Shown: positions 40,765 to 51,231 of the stretch, piece after piece | Layout of the letters: the number at the start of each line of letters is the position of its first letter | How positions within the stretch are numbered: position 1 is the first letter of the stretch | Assembly (NCBI RefSeq): GCF_031769215.1 | Contig: NW_026782140.1 | Location: 1,488,001 to 1,552,000, forward strand | From: Ylistrum balloti | Taxonomy: Eukaryota | Length of the DNA stretch: 64,000 nt | Reading direction: 5' to 3' | Position numbers and translations under genes: made by a program | Notes under the pieces: generated by a model | Databases searched by the model: none | The model's input: the letters and a program-made list of their open reading frames with translations, nothing else | What the model was told of the DNA's origin: nothing

Positions 40765-43700
40765 CTGACCACTATGATGGACAGACTTACTACAGACATA
40801 ATGACCAGTATATATATATATATAAAATACTGACCACTATGATGGACAGACTTACTACAGACATAATAACCAGTATATATATATATATAAAATACTGACC
40901 ACTATGATGGACAGACTTACTACAGACATAATAACCAGTATATATATATATAAAATACTGACCACTATGATGGACAGACTTACTACAGACATAATCACCA
41001 GTATATATATATATACAATACTGACCACTATGATGGACAGACTTACTACAGACATAATAACCAGTATATATATATATAAAATACTGACCACTATGATGGA
41101 CAGACTTACTACAGACATAATCACCAGTATATATATATATACAATACTGACCACTATGATGGACAGACTTTCTTCAGACATAATAACCAAGTCTGTTTCA
41201 GAACTGAAGTTTTTATCTTGAAGAAGATCAATGACAGATAAATTTGGTTTAATTTAGATAGACGTACTAATTTTCTTATATTTACTGTAATATGTACCAA
41301 AATTTTGTGTGTAATGAGATGTATGTTTGAAGGAATACGCTGCCAATGACCTAGAGAGGAACATGCTGGAGGAATACATTGAGAGTTTCACCTCGGGATC
41401 TATACCCTCACACAAAAACGGGTCGAGACATTGGATCAAAAACACAGGTCCTATTGTGGAAACGTAAGTATTATATAACTTTGACAGTAGATATGTACAT
41501 CAGATCACAAATCATTTTCTAATGTTGGGTTCTGGATTACATTTAGCAAGCTTGTCACATGATGTTCAGTGAAGCCAACCAGAAGGAAATCCTACATCAA
41601 ATTGCCCATTCCTGTTAACAGGGCAGTATAAACACAGCAAAGCAATCTTTTTCGACTAGATTATAATTGACCTTTACTTATAATGGCCCTAAATGCTATT
41701 TTTTATTCGTAGTTTGAACGATATTAAAGATATATATTTTGTAGAACAATCCTTTTTATACACCCGTCGGGACATGTTATATTTTCACGTGGGCGGGCAG
41801 GCCGCTGCACATAGGTTTCCATTTAATAACTTGAAGAATTTTTTACAGATTAATTTCAAACTTCGTATGAAGATTTATTACCATAAAAGCCAGATCAAGT
41901 TCGATAACCAACATTTTTCGCCCATTATTTACAGAGTTATGGCTCTTCGTACATTTGCAAAATAGGTTTCCGATCGATAACTTGTCAAATTTTTTACAGT
42001 TTAATTGGAAACTTCACATAAAGGTTTATTACCATAAAAGCCAGAGCCAGGTCAAGATCAATAACCAAAATTTTTCGCCCATTATTTACAGAGTTATGGC
42101 CCTTGGTACATTTGCAAAATAGGTTTCCCCTCAATAACTTGAGTAATTTTTCATTTATTAATTTGAAACTTCATATGAAGGTTTATTACAAAAATAGTTT
42201 TTGACAGGCGTATATTGTTCCGCCCTGCAGTACTCTTGTTTTTTGTGCATTTTTGTTTCAGTATTTTCATTCCTTCATGTTCACAGGTACATTGGCTTCA
42301 TTGAATCATACAGAGACCCATTTGGAATGAGGGGCGAGTTTGAGGGTAGGTCAAATGATATTCAAATGGAGGAGAGAGGTTGAGGGTAGAAAACTGATAT
42401 TCAAATTGAGGAGAGAGTTTGAGGGTAGAAAATAGGTATTTAAATTGAGGCAGGGGAGTTTGAAGTAGGTCAATTGATATTCACAATGAAGGCAGTGTTT
42501 GAGGGTAGGTCAGTGGATATTCAAAATGAGGGGAGCATTGGAGGGTAGGTCAGTGAATATTCAAAAGGAAGGGAGTGTTTGAGGGTAGGTCAGTGGATAT
42601 TCAAAAGGAAGGGAGTGTTTGAGGGTAGGTCAGTGGATCTTCACAATGAGGGGAGTGTTTAAGGGTAGGTCAGTGGATCTTCACAATGAGAGGAGTGTTT
42701 GAGAGTAGGTCAGTGAATATTCAAAAGGAAGGGAGTGTTTGAGGGTAGGTCCGTGAATATTCAAAAGGAAGGGAGTGTTTGAGGGTAGGTCAGTAAATAT
42801 TCAAAAGGAAGTGAGTGTTTGAGGGTAGGTCAGTGAATATTCAAAAGGAAGGGAGTGTTTGAGGGTAGGTCAGTGGATATTCAAAAGGAAGGGAGTGTTT
42901 GAGGGTAGGTCCGTGAATATTCAAAAGGAAGGGAGTGTTTGAGGGTAGGTCAGTGAATATTCAAAAGGAAGGGAGTGTTTGAGGGTAGGTCAGTAAATAT
43001 GCACAATGAGTTGAGTGTTTGAGGGTAGGTCAGTGGATCTTCACAATGAGGGGAGTGTTTGAGGGTAGGTCAGTAGATCTTCACAATGAGGGGAGTGTTT
43101 GAGGGTAGGTCAGTAGATCTTCACAATGAAGGAAGTGTTTGAGGGTAGGTCAGTAGATCTTCACAATGAGGGGAGTGTTTGAGGGTAGGTCAGTAGATCT
43201 TCACAATGAGGGGAGTGTTTGAGGGTAGGTCAGTAGATCTTCACAATGAGGGGAGTGTTTGAGGGTAGGTCAGTTGATCTTCACAATGAGGGGAGTGTTT
43301 GAGGGTAGGTCAGTAGATCTTCACAATGAGGGGAGTGTTTGAGGGTATGTCAGTAGATCTTCACAATGAAGGAAGTGTTTGAGGGTAGGTCAGTAGATCT
43401 TCACAATGAGGGGAGTGTTTGAGGGTAGGTCAGTAGATCTTCACAATGAGGGGAGTGTTTGAGGGTAGGTCAGTAGATCTTCACAATGAAGGAAGTGTTT
43501 GAGGGTAGGTCAGTAGATCTTCACAATGAGGGGAGTGTTTGAGGGTAGGTCAGTGGATCTTCACAATGAGGGGAGTGTTTGAGGGTAGGTCAGTAGATCT
43601 TCACAATGAAGGAAGTGTTTGAGGGTAGGTCAGTGGATCTTCAAATCAAGAGTAGTGTTTTAAGGTAGGTATTTTGATATTCCAACCATGTGTACCTCTA

Positions 43701-46700
43701 CCAGATGTTTATTTGATCATTTTATTTACTGATGACAAGCTAAAGAATGGGTATAGCTAGTTTCAGTGAAACAGACAACTATAAAAACTGGATATGCCAC
43801 CTGGAATTACATCAGAAGTTTTTGTCACTATTGGTGTTGTAGATGAAATTATTTATCGTGTCAGGTTTTGTGGCCGTAGTTAATAAAGAGATGAGTGCCA
43901 AGTTCACCAATCTTGTCACCAACGCAGAGAAGTTTCTACCACTGTTGCCATGGCCAGCATCATTTGAGAAGGACAAATTCTTACGACCTGACTTCACCTC
44001 TCTTGACGTCCTTGCATTTGGAGGATCTGGCATTCCAGCAGGAATCAACATTCCAAACTGTAAGTCAGACTCATGTCTTAAAAGAATCCTGACTTTATCT
44101 GAAAAAAATTAACTGATGTACTCTATAGCATGCTATTGTCATGGGGATGATAATTTTGCTAGTCCGTGGTACAGGAAAATGATTATGAAAAATTAAGTCT
44201 GGAAATAATGAGACACATGGGTATAAGGAAATAGAGACACATGGGTATAAGGAAATAATGAGATACATGGGTATAAGGAAATAATGAGACACATGGGTAT
44301 AAGGAAATATTGAGACACTTGGGTATAAGGAAATATTGAGACACTTGGGTATAAGGAAATATTGAGACACTTGGGTATAAGGAAATATTGAGACACTTGG
44401 ATATAAGGAAATATTGAGACATGTAAGGATAAGGAAATAATGAGACACATGGGTATAAGGAAATATTGAGACACATGGGTATAAGGAAATATTGAGACAC
44501 TTGGATATAAGAAAATATTGAGACATGTAAGGATAAGAAAATAATGAAACACATGAGTATAAAGAAATAATGAGACACATGGGTATAAGGTGTCCTTTTA
44601 CATGAAGATCATGAAATTTCAATCCATTGAAATATAATTTTGATTGTTTTAAAAGAAATCTGCAGAACTTTTCATTTGTAGGTTTTGTTTTAGGGAAACA
44701 GCATGTCCTAGATATTTATACGTGCTGAGTGGTTGTTTGTACAGCTATATTATAGGTATATACATATATATTACATGCATACATGCTGACCTCTAGTTAT
44801 GGCTTGTTTTATGGATTTTTCTCTATACAACATGAAATCAGACGATGACATCCGCCAATCAGAGGGATTTAAGAATGTGTCTCTGGGAAATGTCATAGTA
44901 TCTGCCTACAAGGACACCATGGACAAGATCAGCTTTCTGGCTGAGGAGGACAAGGTCAGTTTATTTAGGATCAGAGTTCGTCAATATATCCATACCCAAT
45001 GATAAAGTTTGTGAATCTAGTTTTCAGGATCACAGTGTGTATATTTTGTATCATTAATAGTTTGTGATGAAGAAATTATCAATTATGTGAAAATATGCAT
45101 TTTTACCATTTTTTAAAAAAGTAACTGACTTTTTGCTTGCAGGAATTATTTGTTAATCTGAAGACAACTACATTTGAAGTCCAAGTGGGTTTACACGAAC
45201 TACTCGGCCATGGTAGTGGAAAGTTGTTTGTCAAGGTGGGTGTTTTTTGTAGTACTCTTGTTACAATCACTGTTAATGTTGAATACACAAAGGCCTCTCA
45301 TAGTTCTCCTGACAAGTTCTATTGAATACAATTAATTTTGGATATACCATGGGGTGGTGGACAGCTGTCTGAGTCAAGATGAATCAAGTTTTTCCATATA
45401 AGTGACTAATAACTAATATCTGAATATTCATTTACACAGGATAAAGAAGGAAATCTCAACTTTGATGTGGCATCAGTGACTGACCCAGAAACAAATAAAA
45501 AGGTGGGTAACACACTGCATGATATTATACTACCACTGTTGTATTTGTAGGATATGTCTAACAGTACCTGTTAATGAGGGAAAGTAACATTGTTACCAGT
45601 ATTACATTTGTAGGATATGTCTAACAGTACCTGTTTATGAGGGAAAGTAACATTGTTACCAGTATTACATTTGTAGGATATGTCTAACAGTACCTGTTTA
45701 TGAGGGAAAGTAACATTGTTACCAGTATTACATTTGTAGGATATGTCTAACGGTGCCTGTTTATGAGGGAAAGTAACATTGTTACCAGTGTTACATTTGT
45801 AGGATATGTCTAACAGTACCTGTTTATGAGGGAAAGTAACATTGTTACCAGTATTACATTTGTAGGATATGTCTAACAGTACCTGTTTATGAGGGAAAGT
45901 AACATTGTTACCAGTGTTACATTTGTAGGATATGTCTAACAGTACCTGTTTATGAGGGAAAGTAACATTGTTACCAGTATTACATTTGTAGGATATGTCT
46001 AACAGTACCTGTTTATGAGGGAAAGTAACATTGTTACCAGTGTTACATTTGTAGGATATGTCTAAAAGTACCTGTTTATGAGGGAAAGTAACATTGTTAC
46101 CAGTATTACATTTGTAGGATATGTCTAACGGTACCTGTTAATGAGGGAAAGTAACATTGTTACCAGTATTACATTTGTAGGATATGTCTAACAGTACCTG
46201 TTTATGAGGGAAAGTAACATTGTTACCAGTGTTACATTTGTAGGATATGTCTAACAGTACCTGTTTATGAGGGAAAGTAACATTGTTACCAGTATTACAT
46301 TTGTAGGATATGTCTAACAGTACCTGTTTATGAGGGAAAGTAACATTGTTACCAGTATTACATTTTCAGGATATGTCTAACAGTACCTGTTTATGAGGGA
46401 AAGTAACATTGTTACCAGTATTACATTTGTAGGATATGTCTAAAAGTACCTGTTTATGAGGGAAAGTAACATTGTTACCAGTGTTACATTTGTAGGATAT
46501 GTCTAAAAGTACCTGTTTATGAGGGAAAGTAACATTGTTACCAGTGTTACATTTGTAGGATATGTCTAACAGTACCTGTTTATGAGGGAAAGTAACATTG
46601 TTACCAGTATTACATTTGTAGAATATATATAATACTACCTGTTTAAGAGAGGCAGTAACACTTGTTACAGATAGAAAAGTAGTTTTGATAAGGAACATGG

Positions 46701-49700
46701 ACAAATAAATAATGTTTACATCCAAACTTGATTTTTTCAGGTAGAGAAGTGGTATGAACACAATGAGTCGTGGGATGGCAAATTTACCACCATAGCTTCC
46801 AGTTACGAAGAATGTCGTGCTGAATGTGTTGGAATCTACCTTTGTCTTTCTGCAGAGGTCCTAAGGTATCAGTAGACAACTGAAGTACAGTCAAACTTTT
46901 ATGAATCGAACTTCGATGTTTTGAATTTCTCAATGTATCAAAGTTTTTGTGTGTTCCCGATATTTAAACCTACATATTACTACTAACTTACCCCTCTATG
47001 AATTGAGTTTTATAAATAGAACTTTACAATGTATGGAAGTTTTTGCAGGGACCATTAGCTATGATAACAATGTAACTGACACCTCATGAATTGAGTTTTA
47101 TAAATAGAACTTTACAATGTATGGAAGTTTTTGCAGGGACCATAAGCTATGATAACAATGTAACTGACACCTCATGAATTGAGTTTTATAAATAGAACTT
47201 TACAATGTATGGAAGTTTTTGCAGGGACCATAAGCTATGATAACAATGTAACTGACACCTCATGAATTGAACAAAATATTTACCTGTATGGATTCTTTCA
47301 ACCCACAGCAAAATTTCAGATATTGTTATCTTACAATGAAATTACAATAGCACGCTATTATCAGCTCTGTGTTACGAGGTAAATTAATGCCTGGACAAAG
47401 ATTAAGATTTAGTTGCTTACTTACATGCCATGATATTTAATCGATGGTAATCGTATGATGTTTATGCTGCCATTGTATTGATGGCATGCAGTTAGGTCTA
47501 ATTTATGGAATTGTGAAAACAACAGGAGGAAATCCTATTACTTGTATGATGATTTCACTAAGTCTCGAAGCGTCTAGAGGTTCTGTAGATATACAGTGTT
47601 TCTGAAGGCTTGGAGATAGGCAGTGTTTCATTTAAACCTCAGTAAATCTCACCTTTTTCTTTGTTGTCAGAATCTTTGGCCATACTGATGATGCTGCTGA
47701 TGATGTAATATACATCAACTGGCTGAATATGGTCCGTGCTGGTCTGCTGGCTCTCGAGTTCTACTCTCCAGAAACAGGTGCTTGGAGACAAGTTAGTACT
47801 TTCTTACACAATAAGTACTTTTGACATTCCTAGTTCTCAAGGAACTTACTTACCAGCAACAAAACACATTACATTTCAAAATGTCATGTGTTAGATGACA
47901 AATTAGAAATTTGTGATTCAGAGAGTGTGACTTTATTACTGTATTTTGTAGAACCACAGCAGGCCTGATTTGTGATCCTGAGAGTGTGACTCTATTACCT
48001 GTATTTTGTAGAACCACAGCAGGCCTGATTTGTGATCCTGAGAGTGTGACTTTATTACCTGTATTTTGTAGAACCACAGCAGGCCTGATTTGTGATCCTG
48101 GGAGTGTGACTCCATTACTGTATTTTGTAGAACCACAGCAGGCCTGATTTGTGATCCTGAGAGTGTGACTTTATTACTGTATTTTGTAGAACCACAGCAG
48201 GCCTGATTTGTGATCCAGAGAGTTTGACTCTATTACAGTATTTTGTAGAACCACAGCAGGCCTGATTTGTGATCCTGAGAGTGTGACATTATTACTGTAT
48301 TTTGTAGAACCACAGCAGGCCTGATTTGTGATCCTGAGAGTGTGACTCTATTACAGTATTTTGTAGAACCACAGCAGGCCTGATTTGTGATCCTGAGAGT
48401 GTGACTCTATTACCTGTATTTTGTAGAACCACAGCAGGCCTGATTTGTGATCCTGAGAGTGTGACTCTATTACCTGTATTTTGTAGAACCACAGCAGGCC
48501 TGATTTGTGATCCTGAGAGTGTGACTTTATTACCTGTATTTTGTAGAACCACAGCAGGCCTGATTTGTGATCCTGAGAGTGTGACTCTATTACTGTATTT
48601 TGTAGAACCACAGCAGGCCTGATTTGTGATCCTGAGAGTGTGACTCTATTACTGTATTTTGTAGAACCACAGCAGGCCTGATTTGTGATCCTGAGAGTGT
48701 GACTGAGAGTGTGACTCTATTACTGTATTTTGTAGAACCACAGCAGGCCTGATTTGTGATCCTGAGAGTGTGACTCTATTACTGTATTTTGTAGAACCAC
48801 AGCAGGCCTGATTTGTGATCCTGAGAGTGTGACTCTATTACCTGTATTTTGTAGAACCACAGCAGGCCTGATTTGTGCTCCTGAGAGTTTGACTCTATTA
48901 CCTGTATTTTGTAGAACCACAGCAGGCCTGATTTGTGCTCCTGAGAGTTTGAATCTATTACCTGTATTTTGTAGAACCACAGCAGGCCTGATTTGTGCTC
49001 CTGAGAGTTTGAATATATTACCTGTATTTTGTAGAACCACAGCAGGCCTGATTTGTGATCCTGAGAGTGTGACTCTATTACCTGTATTTTGTAGAACCAC
49101 AGCAGGCCTGATTTGTGCTCCTGAGAGTTTGAATCTATTACCTGTATTTTGTAGAACCACAGCAGGCCTGATTTGTGATTTTGAGCCAACAGTATAGTTG
49201 TAACACAATGTTATTGAATTTAACATGTTGATGTTTTGTTAACTTTATTTCTATAACATCATTTTTGTTTTTATCATTTGATAATTGTTTCCACTACTAC
49301 TACTACTGCTATTATTTAGAGGGCTTTAATACCCATTTATGTATTTTAGGCTCACATGCAGGCCCGATTTGTGATCCTAAGGGTGTTGCTGGAGGCTGGT
49401 AAGGGACTGGTCACAATAAAATACTTCACTGCTGCTGATGGAAGCGAGGACATGTTGCTCAAGTTGGATCGCAGTAAGATCATCTCTGTTGGCAAACCAG
49501 CTATTGGTGACTTCCTCAGGAAGCTTCAGGTAGGTTTTTCATGTTGACTATAAAATTTGTTAGCAAAGGTAGAATCCCCTGTACTGGTATTTCAAAGAAA
49601 AATGAGATACAATGTATATTTCATTATAATTTTTATGGAACAGACTTTAACTTTTCTGCATTTCATCTTTTCTTGTAAAGGAATTTTTCATTGTATACTA

Positions 49701-51231
49701 ATTAAGTCTTAATGCAAGATGTCAATTAAATGGTTAGTATACAACACTGACCTCAATGTATAAACCAGGTTTACAAGTCCAGTAGTGACCTCGATGTGTA
49801 AACCAGGTTTACATGTCCAGTAGTGACCTTGATGTGTAAACCAGGTTTACAAGTCCAGTAGTGACCTCGATGTGTAAACCAGGTTTACATGTCCAGTAGT
49901 GACCTCGATGTGTAAACCAGGTTTACATGTCCAGTAGTGACCTTGATGTGTAAACCAGGTTTACATGTCCAGTAGTGACCTCGATGTGTAAACCAGGTTT
50001 ACATGTCCAGTAGTGACCTTGATGTGTAAACCAGGTTTACATGTCCAGTAGTGACCTTGATGTATAAACCAGGTTTACATGTCCAGTAGTGACCTTGATG
50101 TGTAAACCAGGTTTACATGTCCAGTAGTGACCTAGATGTATAAACCAGGTTTACATGTCCAGTAGTGACCTCGATGTGTAAACCAGGTTTACATGTCCAG
50201 TAGTGACCTTGATGTGTAAACCAGGTTTACATGTCCAGTAGTGACCTCGATGTATAAACCAGGTTTACATGTCCAGTAGTGACCTCGATGTGTAAACCAG
50301 GTTTACATGTCCAGTAGTGACCTCGATGTATAAAACAGGTTTACATGTCCATTAGTGACCTCGATGTATAAACCAGGTTTACATGTCCAGTAGTGACCTC
50401 GATGTATAAACCAGGTTTACATGTCCAGTAGTGACCTTGATGTGTAAACCAGGTTTACATGTCCAGTAGTGACCTTGATGTATAAACCAGGTTTACATGT
50501 CCAGTAGTGACCTTGATGTGTAAACCAGGTTTACATGTCCAGTAGTGACCTTGATGTATAAACCAGGTTTACATGTCCAGTAGTGACCTCGATGTGTAAA
50601 CCAGGTTTACATGTCCAGTGGTGACCTCGATGTGTAAACCAGTTTTACATGTCCAGTAGTGACCTTGATGATATCATAGTAACAAAGTTAATAAGTCTAA
50701 TAGCAACCTTTATGATATTGTTTTAACCAGGTGTACAAGTCCACAGGTGATGTTGAGGCAGGAAAGGCCTTGTATTTATACTACTCAGATGTACATGATC
50801 GCGAGGAACCCCACTTTTTGACGAGACGTGCCACTGTCCTTGCCAGGAAACAGCCAAGGAAAATGTTTGTCCAGCACAACACTGTCGTCAATGGTATGTA
50901 AATGCACATGTGAATTTTAACCAAAATTTTCTATTTATGTGAAAAAATTGGAGAAATTATATTTTTTCCACCAAATTCGAAATTGACATGATTTGTATCG
51001 GTGACGGATATTATATCAAATGTAGGCAATATCATAAATTTGAAACATGATAATATTCAGCTAGAAGTGCCAAATTTGTGTTTTTTTTCTTTTTCAGGCA
51101 GCACAGTAGATCTGAAGAGTTATGACTCAAATGTGACTGGTCTCATCCAATCCTTCGCTGATCGTTTCCCTTCCACTGATGTTGATACCATTATACAGGG
51201 GCTGTGGGAGAAAGACAAACCATACTTCTAA
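31766..51231 (+). CDS. DPP3: Dipeptidyl peptidase 3 (M49 zinc peptidase), 731 aa, 18 coding exons
   Basis: Exons: 31766-31921, 33008-33127, 34219-34308, 36133-36270, 37940-38014, 38507-38597, 40274-40422, 41333-41463, 42287-42345, 43865-44059, 44842-44954, 45143-45235, 45440-45502, 46741-46865, 47671-47791, 49350-49529, 50731-50893 and 51098-51231. All junctions are GT-AG and the total is 2196 nt in frame. Motifs include [46 protein letters not shown] (45194-45211), EECRAE and AHMQARF. Confidence 0.97.
31960..32885. repeat. 60-bp minisatellite in DPP3 coding intron 1, about 15 copies
   Basis: Unit gtaagttatagatgtaggtgaaccatggttcaggtcagtcatcagtaaattatgatactg. Confidence 0.95.
33815..34205. 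repeat. Minisatellite of about 32-39 bp abutting the acceptor of DPP3 coding exon 3
   Basis: Unit aaatgaaggaatttgtaactacctgtacc(taatg)tata, about 11 copies. Confidence 0.9.
34325..35860. repeat. 28-bp minisatellite just after the donor of DPP3 coding exon 3, about 55 copies
   Basis: Unit tataact(a/g)catatcaatacacatgtgta. Confidence 0.95.
36900..37855. repeat. Minisatellite of about 41-47 bp with a variable (TA)n tract
   Basis: Unit atgtacagtgtagtgtatccatggtagaaacctata(ta)n. Confidence 0.9.
40575..41190. repeat. About 61-bp minisatellite with an embedded (TA)n tract
   Basis: Unit (ta)n-aaatactgaccactatgatggacagacttactacagacataat(c/a)accag, about 10 copies. Confidence 0.9.
41745..42245 (+). 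mobile_element. Non-autonomous Helentron/HINE-like element in DPP3 coding intron 8
   Basis: It starts tttttatacacccg, has a ggcgggcaggc microsatellite-like tract, carries a duplicated internal block (ataggtttcc...ataaccaa...tttttcgcccattatttacagagttatggc) and ends gtactcttgtttttt. Confidence 0.55.
42346..43670. repeat. 40-bp minisatellite starting at the donor of DPP3 coding exon 9, about 33 copies
   Basis: Unit gagggtaggtcagt(a/g)gatcttcacaatgaggggagtgttt. Confidence 0.95.
44200..44590. repeat. 26-bp minisatellite, about 14 copies
   Basis: Unit gagacac(a/t)tgggtataaggaaata(a/t)t. Confidence 0.9.
45540..46625. repeat. 63-bp minisatellite, about 17 copies
   Basis: Unit gatatgtctaacagtacctgtttatgagggaaagtaacattgttaccagtattacatttgtag. 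Confidence 0.95.
46999..47272. repeat. 88-bp tandem repeat, 3 copies
   Basis: tgaattgagttttataaatagaactttacaatg...gacacctca, period checked at 46999/47087. Confidence 0.9.
47905..49185. repeat. About 60-bp minisatellite upstream of DPP3 coding exon 16, about 21 copies
   Basis: Unit tattacctgtattttgtagaaccacagcaggcctgatttgtgatcctgagagtgtgactc. Confidence 0.95.
49755..50670. repeat. 38-bp minisatellite upstream of DPP3 coding exon 17, about 24 copies
   Basis: Unit gt(g/a)taaaccaggtttaca(t/a)gtccagtagtgacct(t/c)gat. Confidence 0.95.

What the first reader, a model, noticed from the sequence alone, without database searches (positions are those of the whole stretch)
47905..49392. 60-bp array is a copy of the acceptor plus the first about 38 nt of exon 16 ([12 protein letters not shown])
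Seen: exon gcaggcccgatttgtgatcctaagggtgt versus unit gcaggcctgatttgtgatcctgagagtgt, 26/29 identical. It is preceded by tgtattttag| (true) versus tgtattttgtag| (unit). The array stops about 160 bp upstream of the real acceptor, so it is a detached copy rather than contiguous slippage. Inference: a junction fragment was duplicated upstream and then amplified about 21-fold, leaving pseudo-exon starts that encode a conserved DPP3 motif.
Basis: seen in the sequence. Interest (0 to 1): 0.75.

Follow-up and report, generated by a model that had tools for sequence, protein, structure and literature searches.

The report
Intronic repeat copied from splice junction
An intron of a DPP3 peptidase gene holds 21 tandem, non-coding copies of its own 3' splice site plus the start of the next exon; this kind of repeat is already known from lancelets and human F7 and is common in this genome, so it is real but ordinary.

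Summary
A 60-bp x 21 array (47910-49185) lies in the intron before the DPP3 exon 49350-49529. Its unit matches one 63-65-bp segment spanning that exon's acceptor (49324-49390). The local score is 50, against a null mean of 15 and maximum of 26. In the 648-Mb genome the unit core occurs only in the array and the exon. The exon start is identical to solved DPP3 proteins, so the exon is the source and the array the copy.

The copies cannot encode the motif. Every unit has CGA>TGA (QA*FVILRV) and a 1-nt deletion, and splicing into any decoy AG meets a stop within 8 codons.

About 137 bp unrelated to the unit separates the array from its source. Whether the array began next to the junction and was later split, or grew from a dispersed seed, stays unresolved.

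Two other DPP3 introns carry arrays that run into their own junctions. Three of seven arrays fits random duplication in short introns (expected 1.9, P=0.28).

This is the "mirage" type of junction-derived minisatellite. Other windows of this scan have reported it repeatedly in this genome, on other DNA. No function is shown.

The parts
47671..47791 (+). Upstream DPP3 exon ([40 protein letters not shown]). It ends in phase 0 at donor caa|gttagt.
   Evidence: Translation; Pfam PF03571 Peptidase_M49 E=3e-11, profile positions 375-415.
47792..47909 (+). 5' part of the intron: AT-rich (31% GC) and unrelated to the unit, the source or the spacer. The left edge of the array is sharp.
   Evidence: Alignments with shuffle and real-sequence nulls: p=0.41-0.99 against source and unit, p=0.77 against the spacer.
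47910..49185 (+). The minisatellite: a partial unit, then 21 units of 59-60 bp (one of 71 bp with an internal 12-bp duplication, the last truncated). Each unit carries a pyrimidine tract and tAG, cAG, cAG decoy acceptors, plus a decayed copy of the exon start. A sub-variant (GCTCC...GTTTGAAT) marks units 16-18 and 20.
   Evidence: mean pairwise identity 94%. All units share the same differences from the source.
49186..49323 (+). Spacer between the array and its source: 26% GC, with no significant similarity to the unit.
   Evidence: Spacer against the unit trimer: score 12, null 9.5 +/- 1.75, p=0.11. The whole-genome search finds only two partial 49-bp matches.
49262..49316 (+). A low-copy motif of about 50 bp inside the spacer (GTTTTTATCATTTGATAAYTG...ACTACTACTACTGCTATTAT), found at about 5 genome loci with unrelated flanks. 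Its nature is unknown.
   Evidence: (4 pattern hits, control 0). None of the other copies lies next to a tandem array.
49324..49390 (+). Source segment of the unit: 26 nt of intron end (likely branch site TTAAT, pyrimidine tract, AG at 49348-49349) plus the first 37-41 nt of the exon. GCT occurs at both ends (49323-49325 and 49388-49390), about 65 bp apart.
   Evidence: The GCT microhomology was read directly from the sequence.
49350..49529 (+). Authentic DPP3 exon ([26 protein letters not shown]...FLRKLQ), with donor cag|gtaggt.
   Evidence: Translation; Pfam M49 E=1.3e-15, profile 416-474; phmmer to solved DPP3 chains E=4.6e-19, residues 567-626; single copy in the genome.

Best explanation
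This is a junction-derived ('mirage'-type) intronic minisatellite of a working DPP3 (peptidase M49) gene. A segment of about 65 bp spanning the 3' splice junction was duplicated into the intron upstream. It comprised about 26 nt of intron end and the first 37-41 nt of the exon that starts [12 protein letters not shown]. Use of the downstream, authentic acceptor keeps the mRNA unchanged, so the extra copy was free to decay. It acquired a CpG>TpG nonsense change, a 1-nt deletion, a GT insertion in the pyrimidine tract, a 4-6-nt deletion and about 8 further substitutions. One decayed version was then amplified and homogenised to 21 units by slippage or unequal exchange. The array is non-coding. 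It presents 21 sets of decoy acceptors, and any use of them would give a stop within 2-8 codons. It is most likely a tolerated by-product of the very high rate of local tandem duplication in this genome. Shown: the array, its homology to the junction, its uniqueness to the locus, the direction of copying, and the loss of coding capacity. Inferred: the order of events, the mechanism of amplification, and neutrality. How the array came to lie 137 bp from its source is unresolved. I lean to a contiguous origin followed by an insertion or replacement (about 45%) over a dispersed seed (about 30%).
For: The array is real. The unit-to-junction alignment scores 50 against a null maximum of 26. Homology covers 59 of 60 unit positions in one contiguous source, 49324-49386. 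The 29-mer has 21 hits in the window and 0 in shuffles. In the whole 648.5-Mb genome the 21-mer core with up to 2 mismatches occurs only in the array (21 hits) and the exon (1), plus one hit on another contig; the control pattern also gave 1. A 180-bp query finds one candidate region only. The exon is a single-copy, conserved DPP3 exon, and the gene keeps HELLGH and EECRAE. Units read QA*FVILRV and NHSRPDL*. Units are 94% alike and all share the same differences from the source. The same gene has a 40-bp array that begins in the exon end and donor at 42347. It also has a 38-bp array that runs through one degenerate unit into the acceptor of the exon at 50731. The kind is described in the literature: amphioxus 'mirages', including an acceptor plus exon-start case in BflGb6 (PMC3087553), and the human F7 IVS7 VNTR (PMC1557585, abstract).
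Against: The array does not abut the authentic junction. The 137-bp spacer is not unit-like (p=0.11). The array edges fall at unit positions 1 and 15, not at the ends of the source segment, so at least one further event is needed under any model. No RNA, population or sister-species data could be consulted, so neutrality, splicing behaviour and age are inferred.
Confidence: 0.85

Rival explanations
1. Dispersed seed. The junction copy was never adjacent to the junction. A break in the intron was repaired by template switching or templated insertion that copied the nearby junction, and this seed then expanded in place. The spacer and the upstream flank are simply the original intron.
For: Both flanks of the array (47792-47909 and 49186-49323) are unique, AT-rich, intron-like sequence with no unit similarity. 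The spacer is not a recognisable high-copy mobile element. Flank plus spacer plus source would make an ordinary intron of about 280 bp.
Against: The array begins with the exon-derived end of a unit joined to the intron-derived start. The seed must therefore already have held a unit-to-unit joint, which means a tandem duplication. The other two junction arrays in this gene are contiguous. The 24 nt just before the source weakly continue the phase of the truncated last unit (p=0.04-0.13).
Confidence: 0.3
2. Functional decoy array. The 21 stop-bearing pseudo-acceptors are used, as poison exons that trigger mRNA decay or as a sink for 3' splice-site factors, to tune DPP3 output.
For: Each unit keeps a pyrimidine tract as good as the real one (12 of 16 against 11 of 16 pyrimidines at -20..-5, read) and three AGs. 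Weak GT donors (GA|GTGTGA) follow about 32 nt later.
Against: There is no RNA evidence. Junction arrays in this gene are no more frequent than a random-duplication model predicts (expected 1.9, observed 3, P=0.28). There is no structural or Rfam signal. In amphioxus, mirages reportedly do not disturb normal splicing (PMC3087553).
Confidence: 0.05
3. A dispersed satellite or a repeat carried by a mobile element that resembles the exon only by chance, or an exon start that was itself recruited from the repeat.
For: The window is packed with minisatellites (68 TRF rows).
Against: The unit is confined to this locus in the whole genome. The similarity is far beyond chance. The exon start is identical to distant DPP3 proteins, so it predates the repeat.
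Confidence: 0.01
4. Assembly artefact: an array that is collapsed, expanded or misplaced.
For: Tandem arrays are error-prone in assemblies. An amphioxus mirage was reported as misassembled in a genome draft (PMC3087553).
Against: The units carry ordered variants and sub-blocks (59- versus 60-bp units, the sub-variant in units 16-18 and 20, one 12-bp internal duplication). The flanks are unique and there are no N runs nearby. The copy number may still be inexact.
Confidence: 0.03

Closest known systems
Amphioxus 'mirage' minisatellites (Adh3; globin genes BflGb6 and BflGb9), as described in PMC3087553
   Same: Tandem, minisatellite-size repeats whose unit is a copy of an exon-intron boundary of the host gene. 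BflGb6 is the same sub-type: the 3' end of the intron plus the 5' part of the exon. Units carry AG/GT signals that could act as cryptic sites, show concerted evolution within the array, and lie in the adjacent intron.
   Different: Mirages are described as spanning the boundary, with the authentic junction as the terminal repeat. Here 137 bp of unrelated sequence lies between the array and the junction. The host is a different phylum (a bivalve according to earlier scan notes; not verified here). The copy number (21) is higher than in the globin cases (3-6). Length instability could not be tested.
Human F7 intron 7 37-bp VNTR (PMC1557585)
   Same: An intronic minisatellite derived from a splice junction, which creates a row of pseudo splice sites next to the authentic one.
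   Different: F7 is a donor-type array whose first unit is the authentic exon 7 donor. The focal array is acceptor-type and detached. The 40-bp DPP3 array at 42338-43670 is the closer analogue of F7.
Intron gain or growth by tandem duplication of proto-splice-site segments (Rogers model, as discussed in PMC3087553)
   Same: Duplication of a segment that contains a splice signal lengthens or creates intronic sequence without changing the mRNA.
   Different: No new intron is created here. An existing intron was enlarged from roughly 150-280 bp to 1558 bp.

Membership tests
Mirage-type (splice-junction-derived) minisatellite | Head-to-tail tandem array with a minisatellite-size unit (10-160 bp in the described cases) | tested here: met
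   Period 60, 21.1 copies, 94% matches; units listed.
Mirage-type (splice-junction-derived) minisatellite | The unit is a copy of the host gene's own exon-intron boundary, holding both intronic and exonic sequence and the splice signal | tested here: met
   59 of 60 unit positions align to 49324-49386 (26 nt intron, AG, 37 nt exon); score 50 against a null maximum of 26.
Mirage-type (splice-junction-derived) minisatellite | The array spans or abuts the authentic boundary, with the authentic junction as the terminal repeat | tested here: not met
   The array ends at 49185 and source homology starts at 49324. The intervening 137 bp is not unit-like (p=0.11). Weak hints of former continuity only (p=0.04-0.13).
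Mirage-type (splice-junction-derived) minisatellite | Lies in the intron next to its source, in the same orientation, on the side where the authentic site still gives the normal mRNA (upstream for an acceptor copy) | tested here: met
   The array lies in the intron 47792-49349, on the + strand, upstream of the acceptor it copies.
Mirage-type (splice-junction-derived) minisatellite | Locus-specific origin: not a dispersed repeat family | tested here: met
   Whole-genome searches find the unit only here.
Mirage-type (splice-junction-derived) minisatellite | Normal splicing is retained, and the array varies in length between alleles | not testable with these tools
   No RNA or population data. 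Indirect only: flanking exons are intact and conserved and the catalytic motifs are present.
DPP3 / peptidase family M49 (host gene) | Match to the Pfam PF03571 profile above the cut-off, and the zinc-binding motifs HEXXGH and EEXR(K)AE | tested here: met
   Nine exon-wise matches covering profile positions 116-527, all above the cut-off. HELLGH at 45194 and EECRAE at 46807.

The most novel reading that the evidence does not exclude
The 21 stop-bearing decoy acceptors are not inert. They are used at a low or regulated level, as poison pseudo-exons or as a sink for 3' splice-site factors, so that array length tunes DPP3 expression. The unrelated 137-bp spacer would then be retained because it insulates the authentic branch site and acceptor from the decoys.
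Probability: 0.05. Interest if true: 0.6.

Novelty: new variant of a known kind. Interest (0 to 1): 0.22.

Why it matters
It matters little on its own. It is one more documented case showing that tandem duplication across a splice junction is tolerated, because the authentic site still yields the normal mRNA. It also shows that such copies can swell an intron about five- to ten-fold; arrays make up 69% of intron length in this part of DPP3. Because the source is a conserved exon, the seed can be identified with certainty. That makes such arrays useful natural markers for how minisatellites are born and homogenised. The detached position is the only unusual point. If a dispersed seed were shown, junction copies would be able to arise by templated repair as well as by slippage.

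Tried and rejected
(1) Unit at unlinked loci: rejected.

(2) A second DPP3 copy as the donor: the exon is single-copy.

(3) Spacer as decayed units: no significant similarity (p=0.11).

(4) Spacer as a copy of the upstream flank (a larger initial duplication): p=0.77.

(5) Upstream flank as a degenerate edge unit or source copy: p=0.41-0.99.

(6) Spacer as a mobile-element insertion with an 8-bp target duplication (ATTTTGAG at 49178-49185, ATTTAGAG at 49314-49321). Only a motif of about 50 bp recurs, at about 5 loci with unrelated flanks and no extended homology. There are no terminal inverted repeats. In two other copies the motif seems to continue into TTTAG-like sequence, so the 'duplication' may belong to the motif. 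Left open, not supported.

(7) The motif as an array-associated element: the other copies are not next to arrays.

(8) Structured RNA or a known RNA family: one sub-threshold lncRNA hit (23.9 bits against a gathering score of 60, E=0.37) and fold z=-1.08.

(9) Coding potential of the array: ORFs up to 168 aa exist on both strands. This is as expected for a 60-bp period, and the 59-bp units break the frame. Not pursued.

(10) Dating by synonymous against non-synonymous change: only about 8 substitutions in 41 exon-derived nt (2 synonymous, 1 nonsense, 1 frameshift, the rest replacement). That is too few to date, though the pattern shows no coding constraint.

(11) The 60-bp array at 31966-32882 as a copy of the donor at about 31932: the similarity is not above chance (z=1.1).

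(12) No eukaryotic relatives are reachable with these tools, so the sister-species check could not be done.

(13) The species (scallop, Ylistrum balloti) is taken from earlier scan notes and was not verified. The contig is not human.

(14) The spliced DPP3 model was not joined. Exons were searched singly by reference.

Full report
**What is there**

The window is part of contig C283 of a 648.5-Mb eukaryotic assembly. It is extremely rich in minisatellites: 68 TRF rows and about 26 separate arrays in 64 kb.

A DPP3 (peptidase M49) gene lies on the + strand. Nine exon-wise matches to Pfam PF03571 cover profile positions 116-527, at window positions:
- 41330-41470
- 42279-42347
- 43864-44061
- 44829-44966
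- 45137-45235
- 46714-46884
- 47671-47791
- 49350-49529
- about 50731-50901

The zinc-site motifs HELLGH (45194) and EECRAE (46807) are intact. I searched the exons one at a time by reference. I did not build or search a joined spliced model. The contig is not human.

**The observation**

TRF finds a 60-bp array at 47909-49179 with 21.1 copies. Splitting it gives a partial unit, then 21 units of 59-60 bp, one of them 71 bp and the last truncated. With the last partial unit the array runs 47910-49185.

The degenerate 29-mer hits 20 units and the exon, and nothing in 100 shuffles.

A local alignment of the unit to the junction scores 50. The null from 2973 random pieces has mean 15.4, sd 2.8 and maximum 26. 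With lenient gap costs the homology covers 59 of the 60 unit positions and maps to one contiguous stretch, 49324-49386. That alignment has 48 matches, 10 mismatches and 5 gap columns.

Read directly from the sequence, the source is about 65 bp, bounded by GCT at 49323-49325 and at 49388-49390. The unit-to-unit joint GTGTGACT|CTATTACC corresponds to GTGTTGCT|TTAATACC. This is the signature of a simple tandem duplication with 3-nt microhomology.

**Direction and locus specificity**

The exon 49350-49529 translates to [21 protein letters not shown].... It matches M49 (E=1.3e-15). Its first 17 residues are identical to solved DPP3 chains at residues 567-583. The exon is therefore ancestral and the array derived.

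In the whole genome the 21-mer core with up to 2 mismatches occurs only in the array (21 hits) and the exon (1). One further hit lies on another contig, and the control pattern also gave 1. A 180-bp query gives one candidate region. The exon is single-copy.

**Coding and splicing potential**

All units share the same differences from the source:
- CGA>TGA at a CpG
- loss of the T of ATG
- GCT>AAC
- a GT inserted before the AG
- a 4-6-nt deletion in the intron part
- CTA>CTG and AGG>AGA, which are synonymous sites and could equally be changes in the exon lineage
- TTG>TGA

In the homologous frame a unit reads QA*FVILRV. From the decoy tAG in the phase left by the upstream exon (phase 0) it reads NHSRPDL*. 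The two later cAGs give CAG GCC TGA and GCC TGA. The claim that the copies 'encode a conserved DPP3 motif' therefore does not hold.

The decoys keep a pyrimidine tract as good as the real one, and weak GT donors follow. Use of the decoys is possible but would yield premature stops. There is no RNA family match and no unusual fold.

**History**

Units are 94% alike. They differ from the source by about 17% substitutions plus 3 indels, and every unit carries these same differences. Two orders of events fit this. Either a single old, decayed copy was amplified late, or the array has been homogenised throughout.

A sub-variant (GCTCC...GTTTGAAT) marks units 16-18 and 20. The 59-bp and 60-bp units form blocks. 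Unit 13 has a 12-bp internal duplication. These are typical traces of slippage or unequal exchange.

**The detachment**

The array lies between two stretches of unique, AT-rich sequence with no similarity to the unit:
- The upstream flank 47792-47909 gives p=0.41-0.99.
- The spacer 49186-49323 gives p=0.11.
- The two flanks do not resemble each other either (p=0.77).

The array edges fall at unit positions 1 and 15, not at the ends of the source segment.

In favour of a once-contiguous array:
- The 24 nt before the source weakly continue the truncated last unit (anchored test p=0.04 with the last-unit variant, p=0.13 with the consensus).
- ATTTTGAG at the array end recurs as ATTTAGAG at 49314-49321.
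- The source has the geometry of a simple tandem duplication.
- The array's first partial unit already holds a unit-to-unit joint.
- The two other junction arrays in this gene are contiguous.

Against it:
- The spacer is not a recognisable mobile element. Only a motif of about 50 bp (49262-49316) recurs, at about 5 loci with unrelated flanks.
- That motif may itself include the TTTAG sequence.

I leave this open: about 45% contiguous then split, about 30% dispersed seed by templated repair, the rest other histories.

**Context in the same gene**

The 40-bp array at 42458-43670 continues leftwards through degenerate units into the exon end and donor GAGG|GTAGGTC at 42347. This gives about 30 donor copies.

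The 38-bp array at 49748-50670 runs through one degenerate unit (p=0.016) into the acceptor and start of the exon at 50731 (p<0.0005).

So three of the seven arrays between 41330 and 50901 are junction-derived. Arrays make up 69% of intron length there. A rough model of random tolerated duplications in the array-free introns expects 1.9 such arrays, and P(3 or more) is 0.28. No junction-specific mechanism is needed.

**What is known**

Tandem repeats of exon-intron boundaries are described as 'mirages' in amphioxus. One case, BflGb6, has the 3' intron end plus the exon start. That paper notes cryptic AG/GT signals, concerted evolution and undisturbed splicing (PMC3087553). The human F7 intron 7 VNTR is the donor-type analogue (PMC1557585, abstract).

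Earlier notes of this scan report many such arrays, donor and acceptor types, in other windows of this same genome. They call the genome the saucer scallop Ylistrum balloti. I did not verify the species.

**Verdict**

This is a real, locus-specific, junction-derived minisatellite. It works like a mirage. It fails only the contiguity criterion, probably through a secondary event. It is non-coding and most likely a tolerated by-product. Interest is low.

Noticed in passing
window 42338-43670: A 40-bp x ~30 array that is contiguous with the donor of the DPP3 exon ending at 42347. The first units are the exon's last ~20 nt plus GTAGGTCA, which gives about 30 copies of the 5' splice site (F7-like, donor-type).
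   Followed up: partly
window 49748-50750: A 38-bp x 24 array that runs through one degenerate unit (50671-50704) into the acceptor and first ~17 nt of the DPP3 exon starting at 50731. It is a contiguous acceptor-type junction array. Its last unit shares the GATGATAT variant with the true junction.
   Followed up: partly
window 31966-32882: A 60-bp x 15 array whose unit holds a consensus donor (CTGGTAAGT), starting 34 bp (31932-31965) after a donor (GTACAG|GTAAGTCAT at about 31931/31932). The similarity to that donor is not above chance (z=1.1), so a junction origin is unconfirmed.
   Followed up: partly
window 49262-49316; L024, L026, L027, L028: A motif of about 50 bp (GTTTTTATCATTTGATAAYTG..ACTACTACTACTGYTATTAT) present at about 5 loci in the genome with unrelated flanks. 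It may be a fragment of an old mobile element or its 3' tail; its nature is unknown.
   Followed up: partly
window 41330-50901: Minisatellite arrays make up about 69% of the intron length in this part of DPP3. Nearly every intron holds one array, with periods of 26-157 bp. The whole window has about 26 arrays in 64 kb.
   Followed up: partly
window 45236-46713: Pfam profile positions 311-324 of M49 are not covered by any exon match. I did not look for it.
   Followed up: no
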